Virus record (IMG/VR): IMGVR_UViG_3300032245_001746
Location: 1 to 64,000 of that record
DNA: 64,000 nucleotides
Strand: one strand, 5' to 3'
Made by a program: the position numbers and the translations under genes. This document shows positions 1-57,155 of this stretch, in pieces. Numbering within the stretch: position 1 is the stretch's first letter; the number at the start of each line of letters is the position of its first letter. The notes below the pieces were generated by a model, which did not search any database, was not told the DNA's origin, and saw only the letters and a program-made list of their open reading frames with translations.

Positions 1-230
1 ATAGAATCACCAGATAATATTAAACTACCAGAAGGGGTGAAATTCTCATTAAATGGAGGGACATAATCAGTTCCAAGAACATAAATTGAATTTTGGTATA
101 AATTTAAATTTATAGGTTGTTGTTCAACTGCTCCAAGAACATAAATTGAATTTTGATATAAAGTTAAGTTTATAGGTTGTTGTTCAACTGCTCCAAGGAC
201 AGAAACTGAATTTTGATATACATTTATCAT
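1..230 (-). CDS. Partial (runs off window) putative virion structural protein with 20-aa tandem repeats
   Basis: ATG at 230 opens MINVYQNSVSVLGAVEQQPINLTLYQNSIYVLGAVEQQPINLNLYQNSIYVLGT..., open to position 1; AATAAATA motif 4 nt upstream; absent from ORF track. Confidence 0.7.
   Translation of the reverse strand, partial: MINVYQNSVSVLGAVEQQPINLTLYQNSIYVLGAVEQQPINLNLYQNSIYVLGTDYVPPFNENFTPSGSLILSGDS
73..219. repeat. 60-bp tandem repeat (~2.5 copies) in coding sequence
   Basis: ccaagaacataaattgaatttt...tataggttgttgttcaactgct recurs at 60-nt period. Confidence 0.9.
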
Positions 231-298
231 AAATTATTTATTAAATTTTTAATAAATTTTAAATTTAATCATGTTTAGCACACGAAAATAAATAATTT

Positions 299-667
299 TT
301 ATAAAAATCCTATTCTTAAAGAAATTAAAACCTGTCCCCCATTTAAATTAATTTCTATTTTTTCAGAAAATGGATATACAAATAACAATATATTGTTTTG
401 AGTTAAATAATATCCAGATATTGTATCTTCTTCATTAATATTAAAAGTTACATCTGGGTATATAATAATATTATTTTCAATGGTCCAATTAGAAGTTCCT
501 AATAATAGTGGAGAATAACCTTCAGAATTACATTCAATTAAATCTTCAAGCAACGGATTATCTGGAATGGATTCATTTGTGTATAAATGCAAAACGTTAT
601 TGTAAGAATATTGTTTACCAACAATATTCTTTAACATTAATTCCTTTCCAGATTCTGCTATCACCAT
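299..667 (-). CDS. Hypothetical protein, possibly tail/structural
   Basis: 122-aa beta-rich ORF (LHLYTN...GYSP...W...FN...GYY) resembling small phage structural proteins. Confidence 0.45.
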   Translation of the reverse strand: MVIAESGKELMLKNIVGKQYSYNNVLHLYTNESIPDNPLLEDLIECNSEGYSPLLLGTSNWTIENNIIIYPDVTFNINEEDTISGYYLTQNNILLFVYPFSEKIEINLNGGQVLISLRIGFL

Positions 668-672
668 AAATA

Positions 673-1371
673 TTAACTTTCTTCATCTAAATTTTTTAAC
701 AATTTGGATATAATTGGATTTCTAACAACACAAGTAGTATCAAATTCAAGTATTGAAATTCCAGGAACATTTTGCAACTTATTCATTACTTCTTTTAATG
801 AACTTTTGTTATATGGCAAGTCACTCTGGGTCGGATCTCCGTTAATGATCATTTTAGAATTGGTTCCAATTCTAGTTAAAAATAATTTCATTTGTGTCAT
901 TGTTGTATTTTGAGCTTCATCTAAAATACAAATTGCATTATCAAATGTACGACCTCTCAAATATGCCAATGGAGCTATTTCTATTGATTTATCAATCATT
1001 TCTCTTTGTGGATTATTTGAACCAACTAACTTGTTTATAGAATCATATAAAGGCATCATATAAGGATTAACTTTTTCTTGAAAATCGCCTGGCAAAAAAC
1101 CTAAATGTTCACCTGACTCAACTATTGGTCTAGTTAAAATAATCTTATTTTTATTTTTAGATAATATTTCATTAATAGCAAAAGCCATTGCTAAATAAGT
1201 TTTTCCACAACCTGCTATTCCAGACATAAAAAGAATATCATGTTGTTCAAATGCAGACCAAGCTAATTTTTGAGAAGAATTTTTAAATTCCACATGAAAT
1301 CTACTATTTCCAGATACTTTTGATTTTGATTTTACGACACCAACATCTTTTTTAGATTTATTGTTTCTCAT
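673..1371 (-). CDS. phoH: PhoH-family ATPase
   Basis: GIAGCGKT Walker A, RPIVESGEHLGFLPG, LAYLRGRTF, DEAQN, GDPTQSDL. Confidence 0.95.
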   Translation of the reverse strand: MRNNKSKKDVGVVKSKSKVSGNSRFHVEFKNSSQKLAWSAFEQHDILFMSGIAGCGKTYLAMAFAINEILSKNKNKIILTRPIVESGEHLGFLPGDFQEKVNPYMMPLYDSINKLVGSNNPQREMIDKSIEIAPLAYLRGRTFDNAICILDEAQNTTMTQMKLFLTRIGTNSKMIINGDPTQSDLPYNKSSLKEVMNKLQNVPGISILEFDTTCVVRNPIISKLLKNLDEES

Positions 1372-1479
1372 ATAAATTATTTATGTGCTTGATTAAAAAT
1401 TAAATAAAAATATCTACATAAATATATTTAAAACTTTAGATATTAACTTTATTAATACCTAATAGTAAAGGAAATAATA

Positions 1480-1938: not shown

Positions 1939-1950
1939 AATAAAAATATT

Positions 1951-4761: not shown

Positions 4762-4762
4762 A

Positions 4763-6008: not shown

Positions 6009-6037
6009 TAAAAACTTTCCATAATAATATATAAATT

Positions 6038-6409
6038 ATGATAGTTAATAATGAATTAAAATTCAAACAATTTTTTAAAGAAGATTCAAATTTAACAAGC
6101 ATGTTATCACCAAACATCGAAAAGAGTCCAGATATAACGAATGGACCTGATAGATTTGGCGTAGAAAAATTGCGAAGTTTAGTTTTACCAATTGTTACAA
6201 CAACTTCTCAAATTAGATTTATTGATGAAAGCAAATCACCAATTTTAATACAATTAAAAAATGGAACTAAATTGTATTTAAGTTATGATCAATTTAAAAA
6301 ATTGAACAATCCCGAAGTGGGCAAAAATATTACAGTTGAATTTATAAGAAATCCAGAAAATAAAAATAAAAATATTACTTCTAAAATTAATAAAATTACC
6401 ATTCATTAA
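6038..6409 (+). CDS. Hypothetical protein with capsid-targeting-like N-terminus
   Basis: LKFKQFFKED; AATATATA 4 nt upstream of ATG. Confidence 0.6.
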   Translation: MIVNNELKFKQFFKEDSNLTSMLSPNIEKSPDITNGPDRFGVEKLRSLVLPIVTTTSQIRFIDESKSPILIQLKNGTKLYLSYDQFKKLNNPEVGKNITVEFIRNPENKNKNITSKINKITIH

Positions 6410-6654: not shown

Positions 6655-7692
6655 TTAATTAGTTTTTGTTTTAGATTTTAAATCTAAAATAGAATCACAA
6701 GGATATTTATCCTCAAGTTCTTGTAACTCTTTTAATTTATTTAAATATTCCTCATTTAATTCATTATTTAATTTAGCTAATTGTAAATTAATTATTATAT
6801 CCCCAAAAACACCAGTATCATTTGATAAACCTTCTCTTTGAAGTCTTAATTTCATTCCACTATTAACATTTTTAGGTATCATTACATCTAAAGTTCCATT
6901 TAAATTAGGAATTGTAATTTTACCTCCAAAAAATAAAGTAGTGTAATTTACAGGAATTTTACAATGAAGATTTAATCCATCTCGTTCAAAAAAATCATGT
7001 TTTGTAATCTTTATTATAACAATTAAATCACCTCTATAATCTGTGCCTATACTGCCTTTTCCTCCTATAACCATATAGGAATTATCTTCTACACCTTTAG
7101 GAAAATTTAAAGAAATATTTTCATTTTCGCAATCAACACTGCCATTTACACATTTCTTACATTTATCTTGAAATTTACGACCTGTTCCATTGCATTCAAT
7201 ACAATCTGTTCTAATTGTAAATGTTTGATTTTTATTTTGATCATATTTAACATTTATTTTACCAGCACCAGCACATTTATTGCAAACAAAAATCTTTTCC
7301 CAACTTGTTCCATTACAATTATCACAAGGTTTTTTGACTGGAAGAGATATAGTTTTTGAACATCCCGTTGAAACTTCTTCCAAAGTTAATTCTACAACAA
7401 ATTTAACATCTAAACTTTGTCTATATCGTTGACGATTAATCGCCTCATTATATTGAGCAAAAACATCACCAACAGTAGCGTAACCAGAAGATGGATTATC
7501 GTATCTGTTACGTTTGTTTGGATCACTTAAAACGTCATAAGCTTCTATAACATCCTTATGTTTTTCTTCAGCTTGACTGTCATCTTTATTCAAATCTGGA
7601 TGATATTTTTTTGCAAGTTTTTTATAAGCTTTTTTAATATCTTCTTGTGAAGCATCTTTAGAAACTTCTAAAATTGAATAATAATCTTTCAT
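6655..7692 (-). CDS. dnaJ: DnaJ co-chaperone
   Basis: J domain with HPD, CxxCxGxG zinc-finger repeats, C-terminal DnaJ domain. Confidence 0.95.
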
Positions 7693-7711
7693 TAAAACAA
7701 ACCTTAAAAAG

Positions 7712-7741
7712 AATAAGAAGAAGTTTAAACTTCTTCTTATT
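7712..7741 (-). terminator. Perfect 30-bp palindrome, likely intrinsic terminator after groES
   Basis: AATAAGAAGAAGTTT/AAACTTCTTCTTATT followed by T-run on minus strand. Confidence 0.7.
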
Positions 7742-7767
7742 AATATTTTTATAAATAAAAAAAATGA

Positions 7768-8121
7768 CTATTCTTCTACTAAAACACACTTGATCATATC
7801 TGGCAAAATCATATTTAATGATCTTCCATTTTTAGAGAGAATACCATCTACAGGAAAATAAGATCCTGCAACCATCACTCTATCGCCCACCTTGAAACCA
7901 AGATTTGGAGCAACACTAGGTCCAATATCCAAAACATAAGCTTGTTGAGAATCTTTTTTATTTGCTTCATCGGTAAGCAAAACAGATGTGGGAGATAATT
8001 CTACCTCTTTAATTCTTTCAATAAGAACCTGATTATTTGCTGGAACTACAGCAGTAATCATCCTTGGTACATTCATTACAACACTTGTTGGCTCGGTTAC
8101 AACATCTTTATTTTTTTTCAT
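7768..8121 (-). CDS. groES: GroES/gp31-like co-chaperonin
   Basis: PANNQVLIE, VLDIGP, FKVGDRVM, MIKCVL match the Cpn10 pattern. Confidence 0.8.
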   Translation of the reverse strand: MKKNKDVVTEPTSVVMNVPRMITAVVPANNQVLIERIKEVELSPTSVLLTDEANKKDSQQAYVLDIGPSVAPNLGFKVGDRVMVAGSYFPVDGILSKNGRSLNMILPDMIKCVLVEE

Positions 8122-8164
8122 TTTATAATTCTTTCTTAAAAACAGTTTAAATTAAACTAGTATG

Positions 8165-8716
8165 TTACGCTGTTTTTTTTGGAATTAAAACACAATTTAA
8201 ATTATTTCCTTCCAATTTAGGATCAATTTCAACACTAGAAACTTCTGACAAAGCCTCTTTTATTTTTTGTAAAACATTGTATCCTAATTCTTTATGAGCA
8301 TTTTCTCTTTTTTCATATTTCAAATTAAATTTGACTTTTAATCCAGAAGTTAAAAACTTTTTAGCAGCATTAATTTTAACATTAAGATCATGATCTCCAA
8401 TTGAAGGACTTAATCTTATTTCTTTCTCAGATAAAGCTTTTTGGCTTTTATTCTTTTCTTTTTGTTTAATAGATTTTTCATATTTAAACTTACTATAATC
8501 CATTATTTTACAAACAGGAGGATTTGCCATTGGTGATACTTCTACCAAATCTAGATTTTGATCTCTTGCAATTTTTTTTGCTGCATCTGTTGAGAATACG
8601 CCTAAATTTTTATCACCATCTACCAACATAACCTTTGGAACTCTAATCATGTCGTTAATTCTTGTTTTATCTTTTGAATTAAAACTATTTTCATTTTTGA
8701 TAAATTTTTTTAACAT
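8165..8716 (-). CDS. infC: Translation initiation factor IF-3
   Basis: RINDMIR, LDLVEVSPMANPPVCKIMDYSKFKYE, KEIRLSPSIGDHD. Confidence 0.97.
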   Translation of the reverse strand: MLKKFIKNENSFNSKDKTRINDMIRVPKVMLVDGDKNLGVFSTDAAKKIARDQNLDLVEVSPMANPPVCKIMDYSKFKYEKSIKQKEKNKSQKALSEKEIRLSPSIGDHDLNVKINAAKKFLTSGLKVKFNLKYEKRENAHKELGYNVLQKIKEALSEVSSVEIDPKLEGNNLNCVLIPKKTA

Positions 8717-8772
8717 AAATTACTTTTTTTACAATTTCCTTTTTTAAAATTAAAAATTAAACCCAATCAATT

Positions 8773-10089
8773 CTACATTTCTTTTGTAACACTGTTAACC
8801 ACTTTTACAACAAATCCATCACCACAATTTGGAAATCTTCGAACCCATTCAACACCTTCTAAATTTTGAACAGATGGAATTGTATTAATTCCTATATAAA
8901 TTTTAACATTATCTTGTAATTCAGAATTAAATTCTTTTAATTTAATACTGCAAACTCTAGTTTTCGTTTTTGGTGCCGAACTTATATTTATATAAGATAT
9001 TTGATTTATTACACTTTTTATGATTAAAGAATCTGCTTTATCATTAAATTCAATTTTAAAATTATTATCAACAGATCCAGCATGATAGTTTCCAACAATT
9101 TCATCTCGGTATTTAATATAACCTAAAGTTTTTATTTCTGTGCCTGGTTGTGTTGCATTAATTAATGAAATACCATTAGTATCATACACAGAAACAGAAA
9201 CGCTATTATCACCCTGATCCAGTATTGGAATTATACTTATTGATTCGTCCAAATTAATATTTGGTATTATTAATATATTGCCTTCATCATCAGGTGATTC
9301 TACTATTTTAATATCATCAGACTCAGATATAAAGATGTAATCATATAAAGATAAATTAGATTCTACTTCTAAAATAGAATTTTTATAATCAAATTCATAA
9401 CTAGATAATTCTAAATCTTTAGTTACAAAAATTGAATCAGACCCAATATTGTATTGTAAGATAGAATCAAAATTAAAAAACAACTTGCTGTTTTGTGGTA
9501 TTACTTTCATTAATTTAAATTCCATCCAATAACAACCAGATAACATGGTATCATTTTGATTCCAATTATAAATTAAATTTGATTGAATTAATTGATCTTT
9601 TATTACATTTCCAGTAATATTAATTATATCATCATAAACTAATTCAATACCACCAAGACTAGAAATTATTCTGTAAATATAGAATGTCGTACCTTTTTTC
9701 CAAGTATTAGCAGCCGTATTATTTAAACCTCTTAAAACAGTAATTTCTTTTGTGTTTTCGTCAACTGACATAACCTGCATGTATTCTGGCGTTCTAGGAT
9801 GATCAAAAAACAACAAATCACCAATTAACAATTGATTAAATCCTATATCGTTTGCTAATAATATTTTATTTTCTACAGACAAAATTGTTTTTTTTAAAAA
9901 AGATTTTGTCCACATATTAACTTCAACAACAAGATTTGGATCTGTTAAATCCATAATTCCAGAACAATCTTCAACACTAATTCTGACAGCAGGATTAGTG
10001 TCATATCTTTTTATTGTGAAATCAGGCTGTAACGAATCACATTCACTTGTTGAACAATTAGAATTGCAATTATTGTAATAAGACATCAC
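8773..10089 (-). CDS. Putative virion (baseplate/BppU-like) protein with adhesin-repeat-like insert
   Basis: FTIKRYDT.P...YNW...DT...G.YWMEF pattern; internal segment resembling cadherin-like repeats. Confidence 0.5.
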   Translation of the reverse strand: MMSYYNNCNSNCSTSECDSLQPDFTIKRYDTNPAVRISVEDCSGIMDLTDPNLVVEVNMWTKSFLKKTILSVENKILLANDIGFNQLLIGDLLFFDHPRTPEYMQVMSVDENTKEITVLRGLNNTAANTWKKGTTFYIYRIISSLGGIELVYDDIINITGNVIKDQLIQSNLIYNWNQNDTMLSGCYWMEFKLMKVIPQNSKLFFNFDSILQYNIGSDSIFVTKDLELSSYEFDYKNSILEVESNLSLYDYIFISESDDIKIVESPDDEGNILIIPNINLDESISIIPILDQGDNSVSVSVYDTNGISLINATQPGTEIKTLGYIKYRDEIVGNYHAGSVDNNFKIEFNDKADSLIIKSVINQISYINISSAPKTKTRVCSIKLKEFNSELQDNVKIYIGINTIPSVQNLEGVEWVRRFPNCGDGFVVKVVNSVTKEM

Positions 10090-10583
10090 GTTCCTTTAAG
10101 TTTGTTGAAATGTTGTATAATTTCATCAAAATTTTGATTATATTGAATCAATTCAACATTGCCAAGTTCAGCAATTAATTTTGATTTTTCTATCTCTGAC
10201 TCATCTAACAATTTAGAACCAAAACCAGAATAGTATACATTATATATGCCAGATCTAACAATATCTAACATACAACTCTTACAAGGAAACATTGTTACAT
10301 ACATGCTCGATCCAGTTAAATCTTTTCCTTTAGCATGCCAAATAGCATTATCTTCAGCATGATGTACAAAAGAGTATTTATTTGGTCTTGTCCAATCAAC
10401 TAAATCATCTTTTATTTGTTTTGGAACTCCATTATACCCTGAACTAATAGGTTGATTATCATTACTAACAATAATAGCACCAACTTGTGTACTTGGATCT
10501 TTGGATCTCATTGCTGTCATATATGCAAGATACATATAATAATCTTGTTTAGAAATAACATTTCTTGGAGGTGTCATATTCAT
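10086..10583 (-). CDS. dCMP deaminase
   Basis: RSKDPSTQVGA, GYNG, HAEDNA, PCKSC. Confidence 0.93.
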   Translation of the reverse strand: MNMTPPRNVISKQDYYMYLAYMTAMRSKDPSTQVGAIIVSNDNQPISSGYNGVPKQIKDDLVDWTRPNKYSFVHHAEDNAIWHAKGKDLTGSSMYVTMFPCKSCMLDIVRSGIYNVYYSGFGSKLLDESEIEKSKLIAELGNVELIQYNQNFDEIIQHFNKLKGT

Positions 10584-10586
10584 ACT

Positions 10587-11123
10587 TTATTTTAATATAT
10601 TTTCAAAAAGTTTTGCTTGTTCGTGAATTTCTGTAGCAACAACAATGTGCCTGCTTTCATTATACCAACTTTTAACAGAATAAAAAGAATCTTTATTGTT
10701 AGTTAAATGTTTTAAATGAAAAGGAACTTTTGTTTCACAAAAAAGCGTATTTGAAACACAATAATTATTGTTTCCGTTAAATTTTAATCCCATCCTAGCA
10801 ACACATCTTCTAATTGCAATATCATTGTAATGATCACTTTTACCTTTTTGTGTTTTATAATCTAGTCCAGATTCCAAATCTTGATATGAATGAACAAAAA
10901 CATTTTTATTATTTTTTAATAAATCTTTTAAAGAAACGAAATTTTTCATTAAGTGATGATAAAAAGAATCTTCATAAATTTGTAAACCTAATTGTAAAGA
11001 ATACATTTGTTTACCAATATAAAAAACCCAAAACCAATTGCCTTCACCAACTGTTTTATTGACTTTTTCAATAAAAGAATCTCTTTTATTTTTTAAATCT
11101 GATACTTTTATTATATCAATCAT
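10587..11123 (-). CDS. Hypothetical protein
   Basis: 178-aa coupled ORF. Confidence 0.6.
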   Translation of the reverse strand: MIDIIKVSDLKNKRDSFIEKVNKTVGEGNWFWVFYIGKQMYSLQLGLQIYEDSFYHHLMKNFVSLKDLLKNNKNVFVHSYQDLESGLDYKTQKGKSDHYNDIAIRRCVARMGLKFNGNNNYCVSNTLFCETKVPFHLKHLTNNKDSFYSVKSWYNESRHIVVATEIHEQAKLFENILK

Positions 11124-11446
11124 GTTTTTTCTTTATTGTTTTTATTATCTTTCTTTTCTAAAGTTTTATTAGATTTATCATCTTTCTTTTCTAACTTTTC
11201 TTTATTTTTATCCTCTTTTTCATCTTTTTTTTCTGGTTCATCCTGACTTTTTTCTTTTTCATCCTCAAGATCTTTTTTATTTTTTTTAGTTTTATCTTGA
11301 TTTTTTTCTTTATTTTTTTTATCTTTTAAAGAAGACAATTCTTTTTCTAAAGAGTCTAGTTGGTTCAACCAATTATCTAATCGATTTGCATCTAAACTTT
11401 TTGATATTTTTTTATTCTTCCAATCTTTGAGTTTTAATAATTTCAT
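11120..11446 (-). CDS. Highly charged K/E/D-rich protein
   Basis: Probable start MKLLKLKDW at 11446 with GATAAATA 5 nt upstream; low-complexity charged tail. Confidence 0.55.
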   Translation of the reverse strand: MKLLKLKDWKNKKISKSLDANRLDNWLNQLDSLEKELSSLKDKKNKEKNQDKTKKNKKDLEDEKEKSQDEPEKKDEKEDKNKEKLEKKDDKSNKTLEKKDNKNNKEKT

Positions 11447-11768
11447 GATAATATTTATCAACATTGTGTCTTTTTATTTTTAATTTACCTTTTTTTATTT
11501 TTTCCATTTTTTCTAAATCAAAAGTTTTTAAAGCTAATTTGTATTCAATTTCTAATTTTTTACATTTAGATATAATTAATTCTTTTACTCTTTTTCTACA
11601 AAAAAAACCTGTATGCTGTACAAATCTTGTTAAATTACCAAAATTATAGTAATAAACTACAGCAGCTTTAGCCATTTCGGTTCTAAATGCCTTTAAAATA
11701 TATGATTTTTCTTTTGGCAAAATTATATTTTGAAAATCACCAGATATTAATTTTAAATCTTTTTCCAT
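11412..11768 (-). CDS. Hypothetical basic protein
   Basis: 118-aa ORF. Confidence 0.5.
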   Translation of the reverse strand: MEKDLKLISGDFQNIILPKEKSYILKAFRTEMAKAAVVYYYNFGNLTRFVQHTGFFCRKRVKELIISKCKKLEIEYKLALKTFDLEKMEKIKKGKLKIKRHNVDKYYHEIIKTQRLEE

Positions 11769-11832
11769 GTTTTTAATCGATATTAATAAATATTATAACA
11801 ATATATAAATGAATTAAATACAGGAGGTTTTT

Positions 11833-12354
11833 ATGAAAAAAAATATATTTTTGGGTTTATTTTTAATAATATGTGTTGGATGTGGAAGAATATCACCAAT
11901 ATCACCAGAATTAGATCAAAGATTAAATAATACTGATGGTAAAATTGATGAAATTAGAAATAACCAAAATGGATTAATGTTGGAATTAGGAAAAATAAAT
12001 CAACAACAAGAAATTATTGGACGCGATATAGAAAACGCACAAGAAGGAATAATAAATTTAAAAGGATCAAGCAACTCTGGTGTTCAAATATTTTCTGGAG
12101 ATGCTGGATTTTTAATGTTTTTTATAATGATTTTTGCATTCACGTATTCAATTTTACATTATAGAAATAAATTTGTAAAATCTAATAAAGTTTCAGAAAT
12201 ATTAGCTCAACAAATAGCTATAAAAAATGATCTTGAACTAGAACAACAAGTATTTATGTCTGCTTTAAACACAGAAGTAGAAAAAGATGTTTATAAAATA
12301 ATATCAAGACATCAAAATGCAATTAAAGCTTTAAATATTAAAAAAACTACTTAA
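11833..12354 (+). CDS. Lipoprotein with coiled coil and internal TM helix
   Basis: Strong SD AGGAGG; MKKNIFLGLFLIICVGC lipobox; TM FLMFFIMIFAFTYSIL. Confidence 0.7.
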   Translation: MKKNIFLGLFLIICVGCGRISPISPELDQRLNNTDGKIDEIRNNQNGLMLELGKINQQQEIIGRDIENAQEGIINLKGSSNSGVQIFSGDAGFLMFFIMIFAFTYSILHYRNKFVKSNKVSEILAQQIAIKNDLELEQQVFMSALNTEVEKDVYKIISRHQNAIKALNIKKTT

Positions 12355-12607
12355 CATTATATCCTTGAGATATATGTTTTAACACTGGATATCCTTGACA
12401 ATTATCCCCAAGTGGTAATATTTGATTAGGATTAGGTTTTAACTTTTCTTCTTTTACAAGTTTGTCAATTTTAGATTTAAGTTCTTTTTTGTGTTTTAAA
12501 CAATTAAATTGCCCTGGATTATCATCACAGGGCATTAAATATCTACAACATCTTGAACCTTCATGTAAAAGACATATATCTATAACATGTTCTTGAGTTA
12601 ATGACAT
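12347..12607 (-). CDS. Small Cys-containing hypothetical protein
   Basis: C...CCRYL..C...C...GDNCQG. Confidence 0.6.
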   Translation of the reverse strand: MSLTQEHVIDICLLHEGSRCCRYLMPCDDNPGQFNCLKHKKELKSKIDKLVKEEKLKPNPNQILPLGDNCQGYPVLKHISQGYNVK

Positions 12608-12620
12608 TAAAATATTTCTT

Positions 12621-12893
12621 TCAATCTTGAGATTCTAAAGTATTAATTATAACTTGAACTCTTTCAGATAACCATTTTTCCAATTGTTGCTTATCATTTT
12701 TAACATTATTTGGAATTTTTACAATAATTGGAGTAAATTCATCCTCGGAATCTAATAATTGCATGTGTTTTTCAACAACATCTCTTATATACTCCGATGT
12801 AGTCTTGCCAAGTTTTTTAGCACATCCAATAACTTTATTTTTAAATTCCAAATCGGCAGCAACCGACATGTTTTTTATTTTTTTTACAGTCAT
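12621..12893 (-). CDS. Ribbon-helix-helix (CopG-like) DNA-binding protein
   Basis: MSVAADLEFKNKV..AKKLGKTTSEYIRDVV. Confidence 0.55.
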   Translation of the reverse strand: MTVKKIKNMSVAADLEFKNKVIGCAKKLGKTTSEYIRDVVEKHMQLLDSEDEFTPIIVKIPNNVKNDKQQLEKWLSERVQVIINTLESQD

Positions 12894-13165
12894 ACAAAAT
12901 TGTCCTTACAAACATCATAATTTTGTTCTTTAACAACTTTAAAAGATTCTCTAAACTTATTAGCATTAGCTTCTTTAATTTTTCTTCTACGCTTTTCGCC
13001 CTTACTCTCATAAAATTGTTTCTCTTTAAATTTAGTAAGAAGTCCAGAATCGTTTACTGCTTTTTGGAAGCTATGAAGTAATATTTTAAAATTTCTTTCT
13101 CTTTCATCATACGATGCATTTGGATGCAAATGTTTTGCTACTACTTTAATTCTTGTGATCGACAT
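12890..13165 (-). CDS. rpsU: Ribosomal protein bS21 homologue
   Basis: FKILLHSFQKAVNDSGLLTKFKEKQFYESKGEKRRRK matches S21 pattern. Confidence 0.85.
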   Translation of the reverse strand: MSITRIKVVAKHLHPNASYDERERNFKILLHSFQKAVNDSGLLTKFKEKQFYESKGEKRRRKIKEANANKFRESFKVVKEQNYDVCKDNFV

Positions 13166-31909: not shown

Positions 31910-32780
31910 TTTTTCTTAATTCATATCTAATAAATGGTCCAGATCTACTGCCTTCTCTTGGAGAAGACAAGGTATACAAATTATTATAAGATCCATTATC
32001 ATCTTTTAAAGGAATATATTTATAAACAAAGTCTAAGGTGCCTGCCTTAGACTTTGTTGGCGTTAACATCCAAGCGTGTTTTATTTCTTTGGAACTTAAT
32101 TTACCAATATGTGCAAATTCTGAGAAAGGAATTGCATCTGGCATATCTTGATGACTTTTCACATTATCTCTTGATATTGCAATTACAATAGAAGGTTTTT
32201 TAATAGATGTTTGAAATTGCATTGGAGCAAAACCATTAGCATAATATTCTGCTGTTTCTGCAGAGCCATAGAAAGTTAAATCATTTTGAATATCTCCCAA
32301 ATTATAATCATTTCTGCTTTGAATAAATCCATTTTTTCTTATGAATTGCCATTCTTCATAAGACATTCCTCGATAAACCAAATTTGGATCTTGTGGAATT
32401 TCTTTAACAGCATCTTTTGGAGATTTATGCAAATAATAACCTGTTTTACCGCCATTGTGTTTTAAATCTAAATGATAAAAATCCCCATTTGGATCAGCCA
32501 TTTCTGGCTTTCTAAATAACTTTGGTTTATTTTGAAAAGAAAAAATAATTTCACTATATCCAGAATGTATTTTCTTCAAAAAAATATCATATCTGTCTCT
32601 AAAATTAGTAAATTCATTTCCATAATATTGGTGAAAAGATTTTCTAACAAATTGTTTTAATTCATCTGAATTAACATTTTTAACAGGTCTCATTCCTGGA
32701 CCTACAACTAAAGGAAATTCTTTTATATCATTATTAATGTAAATAGATTCAGAAAATAACCAATCTTTAAAATTAAACAT
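31902..32780 (-). CDS. Putative ADP-ribosyltransferase-fold protein with capsid-targeting-like N-terminus
   Basis: VYRGMS, LTFY...AEYYA, SEF; MFNFKDWLFSES. Confidence 0.45.
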   Translation of the reverse strand: MFNFKDWLFSESIYINNDIKEFPLVVGPGMRPVKNVNSDELKQFVRKSFHQYYGNEFTNFRDRYDIFLKKIHSGYSEIIFSFQNKPKLFRKPEMADPNGDFYHLDLKHNGGKTGYYLHKSPKDAVKEIPQDPNLVYRGMSYEEWQFIRKNGFIQSRNDYNLGDIQNDLTFYGSAETAEYYANGFAPMQFQTSIKKPSIVIAISRDNVKSHQDMPDAIPFSEFAHIGKLSSKEIKHAWMLTPTKSKAGTLDFVYKYIPLKDDNGSYNNLYTLSSPREGSRSGPFIRYELRKII

Positions 32781-32784
32781 ACAA

Positions 32785-33057
32785 TTATTTATGTTTAATT
32801 AATTTGTTTAATTTGATATTTTCATCAAAATAAATAGTAATTGATCCTTTATATTTAGTCTCATATGGAGCACCTTCAAAACGCTCTAGATGAACTACAT
32901 TATCAAATTCATCTGTAATATAAAAACCATAAAACAAAAAACTTGAATAAAAAACAAATTTATTTTTTCCAAATTTCAATTTATTACAAAAACTATATGG
33001 ATTATTAATATCAGAATAAAGATTAATTTTATAATTTTGGTTCATGAAAATGGACAC
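32785..33057 (-). CDS. Hypothetical protein
   Basis: 90-aa ORF. Confidence 0.5.
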   Translation of the reverse strand: MSIFMNQNYKINLYSDINNPYSFCNKLKFGKNKFVFYSSFLFYGFYITDEFDNVVHLERFEGAPYETKYKGSITIYFDENIKLNKLIKHK

Positions 33058-36617: not shown

Positions 36618-36788
36618 TTACAATAATTCAGCTTTTTTAATAGAAAAATCAACTACTTCTGAATCTTCATACTCTTTTTTTAAAATTATACCTAATTCAG
36701 ATAAAATAAAGGCTAATCTTTCTAAGGATTCAAAAATATCTTCATCTTTAAAAATAGTAATTTTTTTAATTTCTTTCATTTTCATCAT
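36618..36788 (-). CDS. Small hypothetical protein (56 aa, missed by ORF track)
   Basis: MMKMKEIKKITIFKDEDIFESLERLAFILSELGIILKKEYEDSEVVDFSIKKAELL fills the spoVR-clpP gap. Confidence 0.5.
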   Translation of the reverse strand: MMKMKEIKKITIFKDEDIFESLERLAFILSELGIILKKEYEDSEVVDFSIKKAELL

Positions 36789-38367: not shown

Positions 38368-38392
38368 TATATTTATTTCCTTTTTATTTATA

Positions 38393-39595: not shown

Positions 39596-39627
39596 TAAAA
39601 TTTTTCCTTAAACAAAAATATTAAGAA

Positions 39628-39661
39628 AAATAGCCATAACAATTAATTGTTATGGCTATTT
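39628..39661 (-). terminator. Perfect 34-bp palindrome between prkA and yeaH
   Basis: AAATAGCCATAACAATT/AATTGTTATGGCTATTT with T-run on minus strand. Confidence 0.7.
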
Positions 39662-39685
39662 AGCATTATCAAAAACACTTAACAA

Positions 39686-42988: not shown

Positions 42989-43173
42989 AAAGAAATTTCT
43001 TTCGAATCAATAATAAAATACTGATTATAATTTGGTATGTTTAAATATTCAATATAACTCAAACAAATATCTAACATTTGTTTTGCAATTTCTATATTTT
43101 GCGTACACCAAATTCCAGTTTTTGGAAAAGATAAATAATTATTGGATATAGTATTTAATATATAATAATTCAT
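42985..43173 (-). CDS. Hypothetical protein
   Basis: Coupled ORF. Confidence 0.45.
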   Translation of the reverse strand: MNYYILNTISNNYLSFPKTGIWCTQNIEIAKQMLDICLSYIEYLNIPNYNQYFIIDSKEISL

Positions 43174-43331
43174 ATTATAGGCTTGCTTTTAAGATTCTTA
43201 ATTAAAGTAGTTTTAGTTTTTGGTTTTTTAAAACTATTTAATGGTTTTTCTGGAAGCCAGAAGTGTTGTCCTGCACGCCCAGGTTTATTGAGTCCAAATG
43301 ACTCGAAATAATCCTTAAAATTCAATTGCAT
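43173..43331 (-). CDS. Small basic protein with capsid-targeting-like N-terminus (52 aa, missed by ORF track)
   Basis: MQLNFKDYFESFGLNKPGRAGQHFWLPEKPLNSFKKPKTKTTLIKNLKSKPI; TAATG coupling at both ends. Confidence 0.7.
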
Positions 43332-43591
43332 TAAACTGGGTCCTTATCATCATCTGATACTGGCATTAATGCTCCCAACTTATTTAATGGAACATTGGGA
43401 TTTTTAACAACAGATTGTTTTGCAGCAACTACAGGATTTTGTCCCTTTTTAATTGCTGTAGCGGCAGCAGTTTTTGCAGCAGTTGCTGCGGCAGCCAAAA
43501 CCGGATTTGATGCAATCTGTTTTTGTGTATTTTGTTGATTACCTGGAGCCATCATATCTTCCAGCCAATTTTTGAAATATAAATTTTCCAT
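43331..43591 (-). CDS. Ala-rich protein with capsid-targeting-like N-terminus
   Basis: Start MENLYFKNWLED at 43591; AATATATA 5 nt upstream. Confidence 0.65.
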   Translation of the reverse strand: MENLYFKNWLEDMMAPGNQQNTQKQIASNPVLAAAATAAKTAAATAIKKGQNPVVAAKQSVVKNPNVPLNKLGALMPVSDDDKDPV

Positions 43592-43620
43592 AAATTTATA
43601 TATTAATAAATGTAAAAAAA

Positions 43621-43887: not shown

Positions 43888-43891
43888 AAAT

Positions 43892-45264: not shown

Positions 45265-45272
45265 TATAAATA
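45265..45272 (+). promoter_or_regulatory. T4-like late promoter TATAAATA
   Basis: Exact T4 late consensus 4 nt before ATG; similar motifs precede other late-type genes. Confidence 0.55.
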
Positions 45273-45276
45273 ATAT

Positions 45277-46029
45277 ATGGAATTTAATTTCAAAAAATAT
45301 TTTTTAAACGAAATGCCAATTGATAATTTAAAATTAATTGGTAAATGGGGAAATAATGATCCTTTAAGGAGATTTACTAAAATTGATGCTGGAATCTTAA
45401 CTAGTCCTAAAGGAGTGGAAAAAATAAAACAAAAATGGTCAAGAACAGAATATAATTTCAATTTATATTTTGTTCGAGAAAAAAATGCTTGGAAAGAATC
45501 GTTCGTTGGAGAAGTTAACATAGAATATGTTAAACAAAAATTAAATTTAGAATTACCTGAATTAAATGATGATTCAATAACTATAATTTATACCAATAAT
45601 ATTGGTCAAGAAAAACAACCATTAACTGGCTGGACATTAGCACATAGATTTTCTCACGCACTTGTAAGAAATGAATTTTATAAAAATAATTATGTTAAAG
45701 AATTAACAAGATTAATTAATGAATTAAAAGAAGATTTTGGATTAAAATTTTTCAAAGAAATAGATTATTATTATAATCTAGGAACTATGAAATCATGTAG
45801 AGAAAGAAATTTAGCTACACCATTAGAATTTCAACATGAATTGTTTGCACAATTTATAATTAACGGAAAAATAAATTTCAACAAATATGAAAATTGGAAA
45901 TTTGTTAATAAATCAGACAAAGCCTTCAATTCTGAAATCAATCAATTTTTAGAAATAAAAGAAAGAGATTTTGATTATCAAATCAGTTCGGTACTGGGGA
46001 CTTTGCATAATAAAATATTTATTGTTTAA
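45277..46029 (+). CDS. Zincin-like protein with capsid-targeting-like N-terminus
   Basis: MEFNFKKYFLNEM; LAHRFSH...HELFAQ; TATAAATA 4 nt upstream. Confidence 0.55.
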   Translation: MEFNFKKYFLNEMPIDNLKLIGKWGNNDPLRRFTKIDAGILTSPKGVEKIKQKWSRTEYNFNLYFVREKNAWKESFVGEVNIEYVKQKLNLELPELNDDSITIIYTNNIGQEKQPLTGWTLAHRFSHALVRNEFYKNNYVKELTRLINELKEDFGLKFFKEIDYYYNLGTMKSCRERNLATPLEFQHELFAQFIINGKINFNKYENWKFVNKSDKAFNSEINQFLEIKERDFDYQISSVLGTLHNKIFIV

Positions 46030-50736: not shown

Positions 50737-50874
50737 TTACTTCTTTTTATCAAGTTTTTTCTTCTTGAATTTAATTAATTCAGTTGATAACGGCATTGCA
50801 AAATTTGCAACACATGAAGTTGATGTCATTTCTTCTAGCCATTTTTTAAATGATTTTAATTTTATTTTATTCAT
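50737..50874 (-). CDS. Small basic protein with capsid-targeting-like N-terminus (45 aa, missed by ORF track)
   Basis: MNKIKLKSFKKWLEEMTSTSCVANFAMPLSTELIKFKKKKLDKKK; TAATG coupling. Confidence 0.7.
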   Translation of the reverse strand: MNKIKLKSFKKWLEEMTSTSCVANFAMPLSTELIKFKKKKLDKKK

Positions 50875-51281
50875 TACATCATACCCGGAAGCATACCTTG
50901 AGTGTTACCACCCATTCCTCTTGTTAACATAGAATTTAACTTACTTATAGGAACAAATATTTTTTTATCTGAAACAGTATTAGATGGTGTTCTAAGATTA
51001 CCATCTGTTCCTTTATGGAATTTTTTTTGCACCATACCACCATCTATATTAAATGGTGTAATATAAGCGCCTTTCACATCTCCTCTTGCATCTTTTACAA
51101 ATTGGTTTATTAAATAATTAACACCATTAAAATGAAAATTTCCCATTTTCATTTCAGGCGACCAATTTGGAATTTTCTCTAATGCAGAAGGATCAATACC
51201 GAGTTCGTCCTGCAAAGAAGACATATAATTTGCCTTTTTTTCATAAGATTCCATAAAATCTTTAAATGATAATAATTCCAT
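50874..51281 (-). CDS. Hypothetical protein with capsid-targeting-like N-terminus
   Basis: MELLSFKDFMES. Confidence 0.65.
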   Translation of the reverse strand: MELLSFKDFMESYEKKANYMSSLQDELGIDPSALEKIPNWSPEMKMGNFHFNGVNYLINQFVKDARGDVKGAYITPFNIDGGMVQKKFHKGTDGNLRTPSNTVSDKKIFVPISKLNSMLTRGMGGNTQGMLPGMM

Positions 51282-51288
51282 AGTGCAA

Positions 51289-51308
51289 TATATAGTTTAT
51301 TATAAATA
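51289..51308. promoter_or_regulatory. Back-to-back late-promoter-like motifs
   Basis: ACTATATA (minus, 51289-51296) and TATAAATA (plus, 51301-51308) in divergent intergenic region. Confidence 0.45.
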
Positions 51309-52335: not shown

Positions 52336-52336
52336 T

Positions 52337-54885: not shown

Positions 54886-54919
54886 AAAGGTTCCTTAATA
54901 AGGTTTTAAAATTTATTCT

Positions 54920-55201
54920 ATGAAATTTACTAAAAAAAAGAACGATGAAGTTGAGAAGATTTGTAAAAATTGTCTTTTGTATGATATTAAAAATAAATAC
55001 TGTACCGTGATTGTACTTCATGAAGGAAAAAAAATAAATTTACCTACTGATCCTGGTGATTCTTGCATCTTTGAAGATGATGAAGTAAAACAAGTAAAAA
55101 TATGGGTAGAAGACGAAAAAGGCAAAAAAACAGATAAAAATGGTGTTGTAAAAATAGAATATCCTTCTGGATTTTTTGGAGAGGAAACAAATATTGAATG
55201 A
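54920..55201 (+). CDS. Hypothetical Cys-motif protein
   Basis: CKNC...C...C. Confidence 0.55.
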   Translation: MKFTKKKNDEVEKICKNCLLYDIKNKYCTVIVLHEGKKINLPTDPGDSCIFEDDEVKQVKIWVEDEKGKKTDKNGVVKIEYPSGFFGEETNIE

Positions 55202-56040
55202 AAAACTTTTACTTAAAATCATCAAAAAATCAAATTTTTATTTCACATTATCCTTTGAATAACATTCAAGTTGATGAAAATGATATAATAATATTATTAT
55301 GCAACAAATCAATAAAAACACAAGAATTAATTCAATTTAAAAAAAATTTTAATTTTTATAAACAATGTTTAATATTATGTAATACACCAGAAGAAAAAAA
55401 TATTTGTGATAAACAAAAAATATATTCATCATTCATTAATAAAAATTGTTTTATTGATGAATCTATATTCAATATAAAAGAAAATATAAACAAAGAATAT
55501 GATGGAATTTATGCAACTTCAATAAAAGAAAGAAAACGATTACATTTATTAAATGATATACCAAAAATTGCTGTTTTAAAAAATTTTAACCAAGAAGAAC
55601 ATAAACATTTAAATATAGAAAATTTAAATATTATAAACAATTCAATTATAAACAAAGAAGAAATTTGTGAGTATTATAATAAAGCATTATTTGGATGTAT
55701 TTTTTCTATTCAAGATTGTTCATCATCAGTTTCATGTGAATACATGTTGTGTGGATTACCAGTGTTAACAACAAGATCTTCTGGAGGGCGTAGTATATGG
55801 TATAATAAATATAATCATATATTGATAGAACCAAATCAAAATTCTTTAAAAGAAGCTATTAATTTATGTAAAGAAAGAATACAAAAAGGAATATTTAATT
55901 CAGAGTTAATAAGAAGAAATCAAATAAAACTAATGCTTAATTTCAGATTGAAATTCAATAAATTAATCTCTCAATTAACCAATCTAGAATTAGAAGAATG
56001 TATTGACACGTTTAATGAAAATTTCAAATTGCTTCAGTGA
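55198..56040 (+). CDS. Glycosyltransferase family 4-like
   Basis: RKRLHLL, EICEYYNKA, EYMLCGLPVLTTRSSGG. Confidence 0.7.
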   Translation: MKNFYLKSSKNQIFISHYPLNNIQVDENDIIILLCNKSIKTQELIQFKKNFNFYKQCLILCNTPEEKNICDKQKIYSSFINKNCFIDESIFNIKENINKEYDGIYATSIKERKRLHLLNDIPKIAVLKNFNQEEHKHLNIENLNIINNSIINKEEICEYYNKALFGCIFSIQDCSSSVSCEYMLCGLPVLTTRSSGGRSIWYNKYNHILIEPNQNSLKEAINLCKERIQKGIFNSELIRRNQIKLMLNFRLKFNKLISQLTNLELEECIDTFNENFKLLQ

Positions 56041-57121
56041 TATTCCATGAAATTACTCTATAAGGACCAGATTGAGGTGGACAATTATACCAATCACAAT
56101 CTGTTTGATTTGGCAAATTAGAACTAGCAGAAATTGGATCACAAGTTACATTGTCCATTCGAACACACCCTTCTTCTAAATCTAGATTTGGATATGTTGA
56201 CCAACAAAAACTAGTACAAGTGTCTGGATCTACCACATTAATTATAAATGTCCAAATTCCACCATTACAACATAATGAAGCATCTACAGTGTATTGTTTT
56301 GGAGTTTCACATTCTTCGCAATTCGTAGTATAAGAACCTTCCCAACACATTGCGTTTCTAGTTAAAACAATATCATTAATTTCACCACTACAATTATCTG
56401 TTAAATTTAAAATCAATGTTTCTGGAAATGGGTTTGTACAACCAGGATCTGCTTCTTCACACCTAACATCGTTACAGCATTGACATTCTGGATCTGTATT
56501 GGGTCCACCAAATACAGGTTCTGTTTGGACAAAAGCGTTAGAACAATCACAATATTCTTCAAATACAACACCATCATTACAAATTGTTGGACCAAACTGA
56601 AATAGATCATTACAATCTGTTGGATAAAATATCCAATGCATATTGGCACTTTCAGCAGCATTAGTTTCAACAGTTCTAGCATCTATAACTAAAACCAAAT
56701 CACCAGTTGAAGTACAAAAAAGCAACCATGAAACTTCTAATGGTACTGTGAATATACCACAATCATACACTCCCAAATTATGTAATTGCCAACCACTTGC
56801 AGTGCAAGTAGAATCACTTAGTAAGTCTGCAACCTCTGCTGGGACTCTGTCGTTGGGGAAATTATTTAATCTAGGAACATAAACTCTTGAATTAAATTGT
56901 GTACAATTACACTCTAAACTAGCTACACCAGTAATTTGTATCCATAATCCATCTAAACAAGGACAACAATCGCAAGTTTTACAACAATTACAACAAGATG
57001 CAAAATAATCATTACAACTAGCAGTGTCAGCTAAAGCAGTCACTTTTGCATTTAAAGAAGTTAACAACCTGTTTTTAACATTATTTTTTAATTTCAATTT
57101 AATTGAATTAGCAGTTGACAT
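56024..57121 (-). CDS. Cysteine-rich acidic protein, putative virion component
   Basis: 35 Cys in 365 aa; AATAAATA 4 nt upstream of ATG. Confidence 0.65.
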   Translation of the reverse strand: MSTANSIKLKLKNNVKNRLLTSLNAKVTALADTASCNDYFASCCNCCKTCDCCPCLDGLWIQITGVASLECNCTQFNSRVYVPRLNNFPNDRVPAEVADLLSDSTCTASGWQLHNLGVYDCGIFTVPLEVSWLLFCTSTGDLVLVIDARTVETNAAESANMHWIFYPTDCNDLFQFGPTICNDGVVFEEYCDCSNAFVQTEPVFGGPNTDPECQCCNDVRCEEADPGCTNPFPETLILNLTDNCSGEINDIVLTRNAMCWEGSYTTNCEECETPKQYTVDASLCCNGGIWTFIINVVDPDTCTSFCWSTYPNLDLEEGCVRMDNVTCDPISASSNLPNQTDCDWYNCPPQSGPYRVISWNITEAI

Positions 57122-57155
57122 GAATTATTTATTAATGTCAACTGCTAAAAAAAGA

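What the first reader, a model, noticed from the sequence alone, without database searches (positions are those of the whole stretch)
228..57133. Late-promoter motif only 4-7 nt before ATG: apparent leaderless late mRNAs
Seen: AATAAATA-ATTT-ATG (230), CATAAATA-ATTTAT-ATG (1371), AATATATA-AATT-ATG (6038), GATAAATA-TTATC-ATG (11446), AATATATA-AATTT-ATG (43591), TATAAATA-ATAT-ATG (45277), ACTATATA-TTGCACT-ATG (51281), AATAAATA-ATTC-ATG (57121). None has a Shine-Dalgarno, whereas many early-type genes have AAGGA. Known: T4 late promoters are TATAAATA with transcription starting a few nt downstream, and IF3 and bS21 influence leadered versus leaderless initiation. Inference: a late programme of leaderless mRNAs served by phage IF3/bS21.
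Basis: partly seen in the sequence, partly recalled or inferred. Interest (0 to 1): 0.65.

Follow-up and report, generated by a model that had tools for sequence, protein, structure and literature searches.

The report
Start-codon-abutting T4-type late promoters
In this huge T4-related phage, a T4-style late-promoter box sits 4-7 bases before the ATG of about 30 genes that lack a ribosome-binding site, so these genes are probably made as leaderless late mRNAs; more than half encode proteins with a T4-like head-targeting tag, but no RNA data could be obtained and the proposed role of the phage's IF3 and bS21 is not supported.

Summary
All eight sites exist. In the 319,857-bp contig, ATAWATA lies 4-7 nt before the first ATG of 26 genes (2-6 expected). 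ATAWATA-N4-ATG occurs 17 times and opens an ORF of 50 aa or more every time (baseline 16%). These genes lack a Shine-Dalgarno (1/26 against 260/429) and more often head transcription units.

A 595-kb relative (LR756511.1, GC 42%) replicates it with a modal spacer of 5 (17/19). That places the A of ATG at +1 under T4 late-promoter geometry (TATAAATA at -13..-6). T4 itself has no such gene start.

The phage has T4-type head and tail genes and a sigma-domain-2-only factor. It has no own RNA polymerase, and there is no -35-like conservation upstream of the motif.

Best reading: T4-type late promoters placed to give leaderless or near-leaderless mRNAs.

Over half of these genes encode proteins with a T4 capsid-targeting-like N-terminus, which suggests head-packaged cargo.

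The link to phage IF3/bS21 is unsupported. Canonical IF3 and bS21 disfavour leaderless mRNA, both genes are SD-led in a non-late array, and the relative lacks a detectable bS21.

The parts
228..242 (-). AATAAATA (242..235), 4-nt spacer, then ATG (230..228) of an ORF that runs off the contig start (76 aa or more)
1369..1385 (-). CATAAATA (1385..1378), 6-nt spacer, then ATG (1371..1369) of a PhoH-like gene (673-1371). First gene of its strand run, no SD.
   Evidence: The orthologue in LR756511 is SD-led.
6026..6040 (+). AATATATA (6026-6033), 4-nt spacer, then ATG (6038) of a 123-aa gene with a weaker tag-like N-terminus (MIVNNELKFKQFFKE). A single + gene among - genes.
11444..11459 (-). GATAAATA (11459..11452), 5-nt spacer, then ATG (11446..11444). 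This ATG is 6 codons inside the longest ORF (11120-11464), so the start assignment is uncertain.
32778..32793 (-). CATAAATA (32793..32786), 5-nt spacer, then ATG of a 292-aa gene (31902-32780) that starts MFNFKDWLFSE.
43589..43604 (-). AATATATA (43604..43597), 5-nt spacer, then ATG of an 86-aa gene (43331-43591) that starts MENLYFKNWLE
45265..45279 (+). TATAAATA (45265-45272), 4-nt spacer, then ATG of a 250-aa gene (45277-46029) that starts MEFNFKKYFLNE. A single + gene among - genes.
51279..51296 (-). Variant box ACTATATA, 7-nt spacer, then ATG of a 135-aa gene (50874-51281) that starts MELLSFKDFME. Does not match ATAWATA.
57119..57133 (-). AATAAATA (57133..57126), 4-nt spacer, then ATG of a 365-aa gene (56024-57121) of unknown function
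38368..38392 (-). Leadered contrast case: TATAAATA (38392..38385), then AAAAGGA (SD), then a second AATAAATA 2 nt before the ATG (38367) of the SpoVR-like gene
8165..8716 (-). Phage translation initiation factor IF3, full length (IF3_N plus IF3_C). SD-like upstream, no late box.
12890..13165 (-). Phage ribosomal protein bS21 (34.5 bits, cut-off 27). SD-led (AAGGAAATTATTA-ATG), no late box.

Best explanation
NATAWATA is the late promoter of a very large, distantly T4-related phage. It is a lone extended -10-like box with no -35 element. Host RNA polymerase probably reads it with a phage sigma-domain-2-only factor encoded at contig 121428-121952.

About 30 genes in the 320-kb contig (8-9 in this window) have the box so close to the ATG (mode 4 nt here, 5 nt in the 595-kb relative) that transcription should start on or within about 3 nt of the A of the ATG. 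That would give leaderless or near-leaderless mRNAs, translated without a Shine-Dalgarno. Other late genes, such as the major capsid and the gp15-like gene, carry the same box further upstream with an ordinary SD leader.

More than half of the leaderless-type genes encode proteins that begin with a T4 capsid-targeting-like peptide ending in hydrophobic-x-E. The class is therefore largely a set of head-packaged, probably injected, cargo proteins made during head assembly.

Shown: motif, spacing, lack of SD, replication in relatives, T4-type head genes, the sigma fold, the shared N-terminal peptide.
Inferred: promoter activity, late timing, TSS position, packaging.
For: Enrichment and spacing:
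- 26 genes at spacer 4-7 against 2-6 expected, and ATAWATA-N4-ATG opens a long ORF 17/17 times.
- SD-like triplets are mutually exclusive with the motif: 1/26 against 260/429, p 3e-9.
- A divergent upstream neighbour is more common: 12/26 against 102/429, p 0.018.
- ATATATA and ATAAATA are the two most intergenic-enriched of 56 same-composition heptamers.

Promoter-like architecture:
- There is no -35-like conservation upstream of the motif, and the spacer is AT-rich. This is as described for T4 late promoters (PMC2988020).
- Cyanomyoviruses use NATAAATA as their late promoter (PMC2984593).
- T4 places TATAAATA at -13..-6. The N5 mode of LR756511.1 (17/19; relaxed core 29/34) therefore puts the A of ATG at +1.
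- Two divergent gene pairs have only 32-35 bp between their ATGs, each ATG with its own box.

Phage background:
- T4-type MCP, prohead protease, portal, terminase, sheath, tube, gp13, gp15 and gp25 are present.
- No multisubunit RNAP was found.
- A 174-aa factor has only sigma region 2. Its model (pLDDT 82) matches sigma domain 2 at Z 8.7 and T4 gp55 (7d7c_F) at Z 7.5, rmsd 3.1 A over 93 residues.
- The sigma gene is syntenic with the tail tube and sheath genes in relatives.

Conservation and association:
- The Acb1-like orthologue in L044 keeps AATAAATA-N5-ATG with a different spacer and flank.
- Targeting-tag association: 15/26 against 33/423 (p 1e-9) here, and 13/21 against 43/1007 (p 1e-12) in LR756511.1.

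Precedent: most transcripts of Thermus phages Lalka27a and YS40 are leaderless (bioRxiv 10.64898/2026.04.20.719267).
Against:
- Under strict T4 geometry, the N4 mode of this phage would put +1 on the T of ATG. Initiation would have to occur one base closer than in T4.
- No gp55, gp33 or gp45 homologue was found by sequence. The sigma fold match to gp55 is no better than to other sigma-2 domains.
- Several motif genes are not obviously late functions: PhoH-like, a family-25 glycosyltransferase, a GIY-YIG homing endonuclease.
- Only 6 of 26 have orthologues in LR756511.1. There, PhoH is SD-led and another is leadered in L044, so the arrangement is evolutionarily labile.
- The genome record is only about 63% complete.
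Confidence: 0.68

Rival explanations
1. The box is a non-SD translation-initiation signal (an AU-rich enhancer or standby site, for example bound by bS1) at a fixed distance from the ATG. It would act within longer polycistronic mRNAs. It would not be a promoter, and the mRNAs would not be leaderless.
For: The fixed 4-5-nt spacing and mutual exclusion with SD are what a ribosome-binding element would also show. About half of the motif genes sit inside co-directional arrays with short gaps.
Against: - The sequence equals the late-promoter consensus of T4-related phages.
- The same box also occurs 13-35 nt upstream of SD-led genes, including the capsid and gp15-like genes.
- It is enriched at heads of transcription units and in back-to-back divergent pairs.
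- The modal spacing shifts by one nt between the two phages, and spacers of 6-8 nt also occur. That suits TSS selection better than rRNA or protein docking.
- T4, which has the same box, never uses it at this distance.
Confidence: 0.12
2. The enrichment is a by-product of duplication or recombinational shuffling of one cassette (box plus ATG plus targeting-tag codons), as at the T-even internal-protein loci. It would not be an independent selected spacing.
For: More than half of the genes share the N-terminal peptide. One pair (183528-184292 and 186319-187101) are paralogues. Two divergent pairs are near-palindromic.
Against: - Apart from that pair, the proteins show no BLASTP similarity to each other.
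- Spacer sequences and upstream flanks differ.
- 11 of 26 genes have no tag yet keep the spacing (PhoH-like, glycosyltransferase, a 701-aa protein and others).
- The distance from the ATG to the F-K core of the tag varies by 0-7 residues.
- This account would explain how the arrangement spreads. It does not remove the promoter and leaderless reading.
Confidence: 0.08
3. One reading: a late leaderless programme that depends on, or is favoured by, the phage-encoded IF3 and bS21.
For: Both genes are present and intact in the window. IF3 is also present in the relative that shares the arrangement. Phage bS21 has been proposed to favour late phage mRNAs in other phages (PMC9723584).
Against: - Ribosomes lacking bS21 and uS2 translate leaderless cI mRNA better (PMC10491246).
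- Canonical IF3 antagonises 5'-terminal AUG initiation (my own knowledge of work by Moll, Blasi and colleagues; not checked here).
- The phage IF3 has both canonical domains.
- Both genes are SD-led with no late box, among DnaJ, GroES-like and replication genes.
- LR756511.1 has no detectable bS21.
Confidence: 0.1

Closest known systems
Bacteriophage T4 late promoters (TATAAATA; gp55, gp33, gp45) and the NATAAATA late promoters of T4-like cyanomyoviruses
   Same: - Same 8-bp box, with the first base variable.
- No -35 element and an AT-rich stretch downstream.
- The phage has T4-type head and tail genes and a small factor with only sigma region 2.
- The box is also found upstream of SD-led structural genes.
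   Different: - In T4, no gene start lies within 0-11 nt of the box, and late mRNAs have SD leaders. Here about 6% of genes have the ATG 4-7 nt after the box.
- gp55, gp33 and gp45 are not recognisable by sequence.
- The replicase is a DnaE-type Pol III alpha, not gp43.
Leaderless transcripts of Thermus phages (phiYS40, Lalka27a) and lambda cI from pRM
   Same: The promoter -10 element is placed so that the 5' end is the A or G of the start codon, with no SD. In the Thermus phages this holds for most transcripts, including those from late promoters with a distinct consensus.
   Different: - In those cases the 5' ends were measured. Here they are only inferred.
- In Lalka27a the late -10 box is TAGGGT, not TATAAATA.
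- In Thermus, leaderless is the rule. Here it is a minority class beside an SD-led majority (61% of other genes), enriched for tagged cargo genes.
T4 internal proteins (IPI, IPII, IPIII) with the capsid targeting sequence
   Same: - The N-terminal peptide is nearly the same. T4 ipII and ipIII have MKTYQEFIAE and ipI has MKTFKEF. Here MKTFKEWMFNE and MNFKEWLITE occur; LR756511.1 has MKTFKEFAALKE.
- The peptide ends in hydrophobic-x-E, and a gp21-type protease is present.
- The proteins are otherwise unrelated to each other, as described for T-even internal proteins (PMC3012670).
   Different: - About 40-55 candidates per genome under a loose pattern (which also hits 8 T4 genes), against three internal proteins in T4.
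- The set includes large enzymes: a UvrD-like helicase, an Acb1-like phosphoesterase, and kinase-like and polymerase-like proteins.
- T4 ip genes are SD-led. Here many are leaderless-type.
- Packaging has not been tested.

Membership tests
T4-type (gp55-class) late promoter | 8-bp TATAAATA-like box as the only conserved element; first base variable | tested here: met
   Consensus A/C/T/G-ATA-A/T-ATA. The motif columns carry 1.4-1.7 bits each. T4 tolerates A at -13.
T4-type (gp55-class) late promoter | No -35-like conservation; AT-rich segment just downstream of the box | tested here: met
   At most 0.6 bits at any of the 35 upstream positions. Spacer AT is 0.84 against 0.72 for the genome, and 0.68 against 0.58 in LR756511.1.
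T4-type (gp55-class) late promoter | A gp55-type factor (sigma region 2 only, about 180 aa) encoded by the phage | tested here: inconclusive
   A 174-aa protein at contig 121428-121952 matches Sigma70_r2 at 25-27 bits. The fold matches sigma domain 2 at Z 8.7 and gp55 7d7c_F at Z 7.5. There is no BLASTP or phmmer similarity to T4 gp55.
T4-type (gp55-class) late promoter | gp33 co-activator and gp45 sliding-clamp activator | tested here: not met
   No PF02916 match. No phmmer hit for T4 gp33, gp45, gp44 or gp62. The record is about 63% complete and these proteins diverge fast, so absence is weak evidence.
T4-type (gp55-class) late promoter | Activity late in infection, with transcription starting about 6 nt after the box | not testable with these tools
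Leaderless mRNA | -10-type element about 5-7 nt upstream of the start codon | tested here: met
   Modal spacer is 4 nt here and 5 nt in LR756511.1.
Leaderless mRNA | No Shine-Dalgarno before the start codon | tested here: met
   1/26 against 260/429 here; 1/21 against 636/1007 in LR756511.1.
Leaderless mRNA | Transcript 5' end coincides with the start codon | not testable with these tools
   No RNA reads could be obtained.
T4 capsid-targeted internal proteins | N-terminal targeting peptide of about 10 aa like MKTYQEFIAE or MKTFKEF, ending at a prohead-protease site | tested here: met
   48 candidates by regex here, 56 in LR756511.1 and 8 in T4, the T4 set including ipI, ipII and ipIII. The regex is loose and some hits look spurious. 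Hydrophobic-x-E is present in 15/15 and 14/15 of the leaderless-type subset.
T4 capsid-targeted internal proteins | gp21-type prohead protease and gp23-type capsid in the same genome | tested here: met
   PF03420 at 92 bits and PF07068 at 296 bits.
T4 capsid-targeted internal proteins | Protein present, N-terminally processed, in virions | not testable with these tools
   Needs virion proteomics.

The most novel reading that the evidence does not exclude
A clade of huge T4-related phages (this phage, LR756511.1 and relatives) runs a dedicated leaderless late regulon. Its core would be a modular cassette of late-promoter box, ATG and capsid-targeting tag. The cassette would load dozens of unrelated proteins into the head for injection, including an Acb1-like phosphoesterase, a UvrD-like helicase, and kinase-like and polymerase-like enzymes. 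Leaderless initiation, possibly set against the phage's own IF3, would be the way their output is tuned apart from the SD-led bulk structural proteins.
Probability: 0.3. Interest if true: 0.75.

Novelty: new variant of a known kind. Interest (0 to 1): 0.58.

Why it matters
If transcript mapping confirms it, a T4-type late promoter would be shown to double as the whole expression signal of a gene. That would define a second, SD-free translation class inside one phage, which T4 does not have.

It gives a sequence rule (NATAWATA-N4/5-ATG) that fixes true start codons in these poorly annotated huge phages.

It also flags dozens of candidate head-packaged, injected proteins, including anti-defence-like enzymes, for proteomic and functional tests.

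Finally, it bears on why huge phages carry IF3 and bS21.

Tried and rejected
- gp55 by sequence: BLASTP and a six-frame search with T4 gp55 found nothing. PDB phmmer gave only E about 0.6-0.8 to sigma factors. Foldseek gave no hit at E of 0.001 or better. VIA-align gave sigma-2 at Z about 8 and gp55 at Z 7.5, which does not discriminate.
- Phage RNA polymerase: no beta or beta' domains found, so a phiKZ-type own-RNAP explanation was dropped.
- gp45 clamp family PF02916: no match.
- PHROGs and Pfam on motif genes and on leadered-motif genes: mostly no family. The 'late/structural' status of most of them therefore could not be shown by annotation.
- The search for related loci with the 365-aa motif gene found no relative. 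With the MCP it found one 17-kb contig.
- Orthologue conservation in LR756511.1: only 6 of 26 genes have orthologues and only some keep the arrangement.
- Stop-start coupling through the TAA inside ATAAATA was rejected. Only 5 of 26 upstream gaps are 13 nt or less, 12 upstream neighbours are divergent, and the ATATATA form has no stop codon.
- A dinucleotide-shuffle script timed out. Mononucleotide, Markov and offset nulls replaced it.
- The paper on P23-45 (PMC3018760) is not held.


Full report
**What the sequence is**

The window is the first 64 kb of a 319,857-bp IMG/VR virus record (linear, CheckV about 63% complete, GC 28%). The same sigma protein also occurs on a 530,789-bp contig elsewhere. 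My ORF tiling gives 455 genes at 92% coding density.

The phage is a distant member of the T4 superfamily:
- Gp23-type major capsid (296 bits) and gp21-type prohead protease (92 bits).
- phmmer matches to T4 portal, large terminase, sheath, tube, gp13, gp15, gp4, gp25, gp53, gp41, gp32, UvsW and gp47.
- No RNA polymerase beta or beta' domains.

The window itself is a replication and chaperone region, not a structural one. It holds GyrB and GyrA, a Pol III alpha split over two ORFs, RecA, PrkA, SpoVR, DnaJ, a GroES-like protein, dCMP deaminase, IF3 and bS21. Inteins interrupt GyrB, Pol III alpha and RecA.

The closest GenBank record is LR756511.1, an unannotated 595,163-bp uncultured phage (MCP 67% identical, GC 42%).

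All eight sites are present. The one at 51281 is a one-mismatch variant, and one more site, at 32780, was missed.

Genome-wide, the distance from NATAWATA to the first ATG of a gene peaks sharply at 4 nt. There are 15 genes at that offset, against about 1.4 per offset elsewhere.

Twenty-six genes have the core ATAWATA 4-7 nt before the ATG. The expected numbers are:

| Null model | Expected genes at spacer 4-7 |
|---|---|
| Per-gene AT-matched shuffles (maximum 15 in 1000) | 5.5 |
| First-order Markov model | 2.3 |
| Other offsets in the same sequences | 5.8 |

Read from the motif side, ATAWATA-N4-ATG occurs 17 times on both strands, and all 17 open an ORF of 50 aa or more. Only 16% of all ATGs do so. 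ATAAATA at -11..-5 is the commonest heptamer before gene starts, above any Shine-Dalgarno heptamer.

Most genes do use an SD (AAGGA or AGGAG at -13..-8). The motif genes do not: 1/26 against 260/429, p 3e-9.

**It behaves like a promoter**

- Motif genes more often have a divergent upstream neighbour: 12/26 against 102/429, p 0.018.
- ATATATA and ATAAATA are the two most intergenic-enriched of all 56 heptamers of the same composition (43% and 23% intergenic, against a median of 12%). ATATATA is about five-fold depleted overall.
- Nothing is conserved in the 35 nt upstream of the box, and the spacer is more AT-rich than the genome. This is the published description of a T4 late promoter: an 8-bp TATA box about one helical turn upstream of the start, no -35 element, AT-rich downstream (PMC2988020). 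T4-like cyanophages use NATAAATA (PMC2984593).
- The same box also lies 13-35 nt upstream of SD-led genes, including the major capsid and gp15-like genes.
- Two divergent gene pairs (contig 73167/73200 and 174548/174584) have only 32-35 bp between their ATGs, each ATG with its own box 4-7 nt away.

**Geometry and the leaderless inference**

The T4 review numbers the first T of TATAAATA as -13, so the box spans -13..-6. A 5-nt spacer therefore puts the A of ATG at +1.

That is exactly the mode in LR756511.1:

| Spacer | Exact core ATAWATA (ORFs opened / occurrences) | Relaxed core TAWATA |
|---|---|---|
| N4 | 5/5 | 21/23 |
| N5 | 17/19 | 29/34 |
| N6 | 3/3 | 11/15 |

The baseline in LR756511.1 is 23% of ATGs.

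In the present phage the mode is one nt shorter. Initiation would then have to occur one base closer than in T4, or on the A by purine preference. This is an open point.

T4 itself has no gene start within 0-11 nt of the box. The arrangement is therefore not a general T4 trait.

There is measured precedent elsewhere. Most transcripts of Thermus phages Lalka27a and YS40 begin with the A or G of the start codon.

**Transcription factor**

One 174-aa ORF (contig 121428-121952) matches only sigma region 2. It has eight homologues in huge-phage contigs.

It sits next to the tail tube, sheath and gp15 genes in relatives.

Its AlphaFold model (pLDDT 82) aligns to sigma domain 2 of group-1 sigmas at Z 8.0-8.7. 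It aligns to T4 gp55 (7d7c_F) at Z 7.5, rmsd 3.1 A over 93 residues.

In size and architecture it resembles gp55, but membership is not shown. There is no sequence similarity to gp55, and no gp33 or gp45 was found.

**An unexpected association**

Fifteen of the 26 leaderless-type genes encode otherwise unrelated proteins that begin with M-x(0-7)-[FY]-K-x-[WFY]-hydrophobic...E. Examples are MNFKEWLITE, MLEFKKWILNE and MDFKQFFENE.

T4's own internal proteins read MKTYQEFIAE (ipII, ipIII) and MKTFKEF (ipI) in the T4 record. The present phage has MKTFKEWMFNE and LR756511.1 has MKTFKEFAALKE.

The T4 head review describes the internal proteins as diverse defence-countering proteins that share only this capsid targeting sequence (PMC3012670).

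The association with the leaderless-type promoter is strong in both genomes:

| Genome | Tag-like among leaderless-type genes | Tag-like among other genes | p |
|---|---|---|---|
| This phage | 15/26 | 33/423 | 1e-9 |
| LR756511.1 | 13/21 | 43/1007 | 1e-12 |

All but one of the tagged leaderless-type genes carry hydrophobic-x-E within residues 5-18, a form compatible with a gp21-type cleavage site.

Tagged proteins include:
- an Acb1-like 2H phosphoesterase;
- a helicase-sized 853-aa protein whose L044 orthologue has UvrD domains;
- a polynucleotide-kinase-like protein and a polymerase-like protein.

Proteins built into proheads must be made late, so this supports the 'late' label independently. 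Packaging itself is untested.

**Conservation**

In the relative L044 (sigma 63% identical), three orthologous starts could be compared:
- The Acb1-like orthologue keeps AATAAATA-N5-ATG, with a different spacer and flanks.
- The helicase keeps the box at N6 (N8 here).
- A third orthologue is leadered there.

In LR756511.1 only 6 of 26 genes have orthologues, and the PhoH orthologue there is SD-led. The arrangement is a property of a variable gene class and is gained and lost.

**IF3 and bS21**

Both genes are real. IF3 has both canonical domains. Several points speak against the proposed role:
- Both genes are SD-led, carry no late box, and lie among chaperone and replication genes.
- Ribosomes lacking bS21 and uS2 translate leaderless lambda cI mRNA better (PMC10491246).
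- Canonical IF3 disfavours 5'-terminal AUGs. This is my own knowledge and was not checked here.
- LR756511.1 has IF3 (48% identical) but no detectable bS21.

The proposal that these factors serve the leaderless class has no support and runs against the known direction of their effects. That they shift the balance between the two mRNA classes remains possible.

**Verdict**

- Observation: confirmed.
- 'Late promoter abutting the ATG, hence leaderless late mRNAs': the best-supported reading (about 0.68), but inferred without transcript data.
- IF3/bS21 link: not supported.
- Novelty: a new variant of known kinds. It combines a T4-type late promoter with phage leaderless transcription. The added point is that it marks a large set of capsid-targeting-tagged genes.

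Noticed in passing
Window 31902-32780, 43331-43591, 45277-46029, 50874-51281, 1480-1938, 30959-31909, 43170-43331; contig-wide list: About 40-48 proteins begin with a T4 capsid-targeting-like peptide (for example MNFKEWLITE, MKTFKEWMFNE) ending in hydrophobic-x-E, beside a gp21-type protease. LR756511.1 has about 45-56. The count comes from a loose pattern and includes some spurious hits. This suggests an unusually large set of head-packaged, injected proteins.
   Followed up: partly
G000 contig 128712-129236 (-); orthologue at L044:17162-17683 (-): An Acb1-like 2H phosphoesterase (anti-CBASS family, PF23474) carries the targeting-like N-terminus and a conserved AATAAATA-N5-ATG. It may be a pre-packaged anti-defence enzyme.
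   Followed up: partly
G000 contig 73167 (-) / 73200 (+) and 174548 (-) / 174584 (+): These are back-to-back divergent gene pairs with 32-35 bp between their ATGs. Each ATG has its own box, and the second pair is near-palindromic. At 73167 the box-proximal ATG, not the longest-ORF ATG at 73188, is probably the true start (MNNLNFKFWILE).
   Followed up: partly
Window 24232-27498, 33042-35666 with 18627-21260, 60772-63108: Inteins with LAGLIDADG endonuclease domains interrupt GyrB, the N-terminal part of a DnaE-type Pol III alpha (which is split over two separate ORFs), and RecA.
   Followed up: no
Window 36766-41773: A PrkA kinase (39686-41773), a 400-aa ORF (38393-39595) and a SpoVR-like gene (36766-38367) form a cluster. 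This is a bacterial stress or sporulation-type trio, unusual in a phage. The SpoVR-like gene has tandem late boxes around an SD.
   Followed up: no
Window 6655-13165: A translation and chaperone cluster: DnaJ (6655-7692), a GroES-like protein (7768-8121), full-length IF3 (8165-8716), dCMP deaminase (10086-10583) and bS21 (12890-13165). The called IF3 ATG has its SD-like AAAGGAAA unusually far upstream (about 20 nt or more), so its true start may differ.
   Followed up: partly
G000 contig 121428-121952 (+); L044:10001-10516: The sigma-region-2-only factor is conserved in synteny next to the tail tube, sheath, gp15 and T4-baseplate genes in relatives from several metagenomes.
   Followed up: partly
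Whole contig: ATATATA is about five-fold depleted relative to heptamers of the same composition (87 copies against a median of 422), and 43% of its copies are intergenic. This is consistent with selection against spurious late promoters inside genes.
   Followed up: yes
LR756511.1 (L028-L039): In the 42%-GC relative the box is looser at its first base (CTAAATA, CTATATA, CTACATA, TTAAATA) and the modal spacer is 5, not 4. About 60-80 genes there have the leaderless-type layout.
   Followed up: partly
G000 contig 107051-107965 (+): A GIY-YIG homing-endonuclease-like gene also carries CATATATA-N4-ATG. T4 seg and mob genes are likewise often late-expressed.
   Followed up: no
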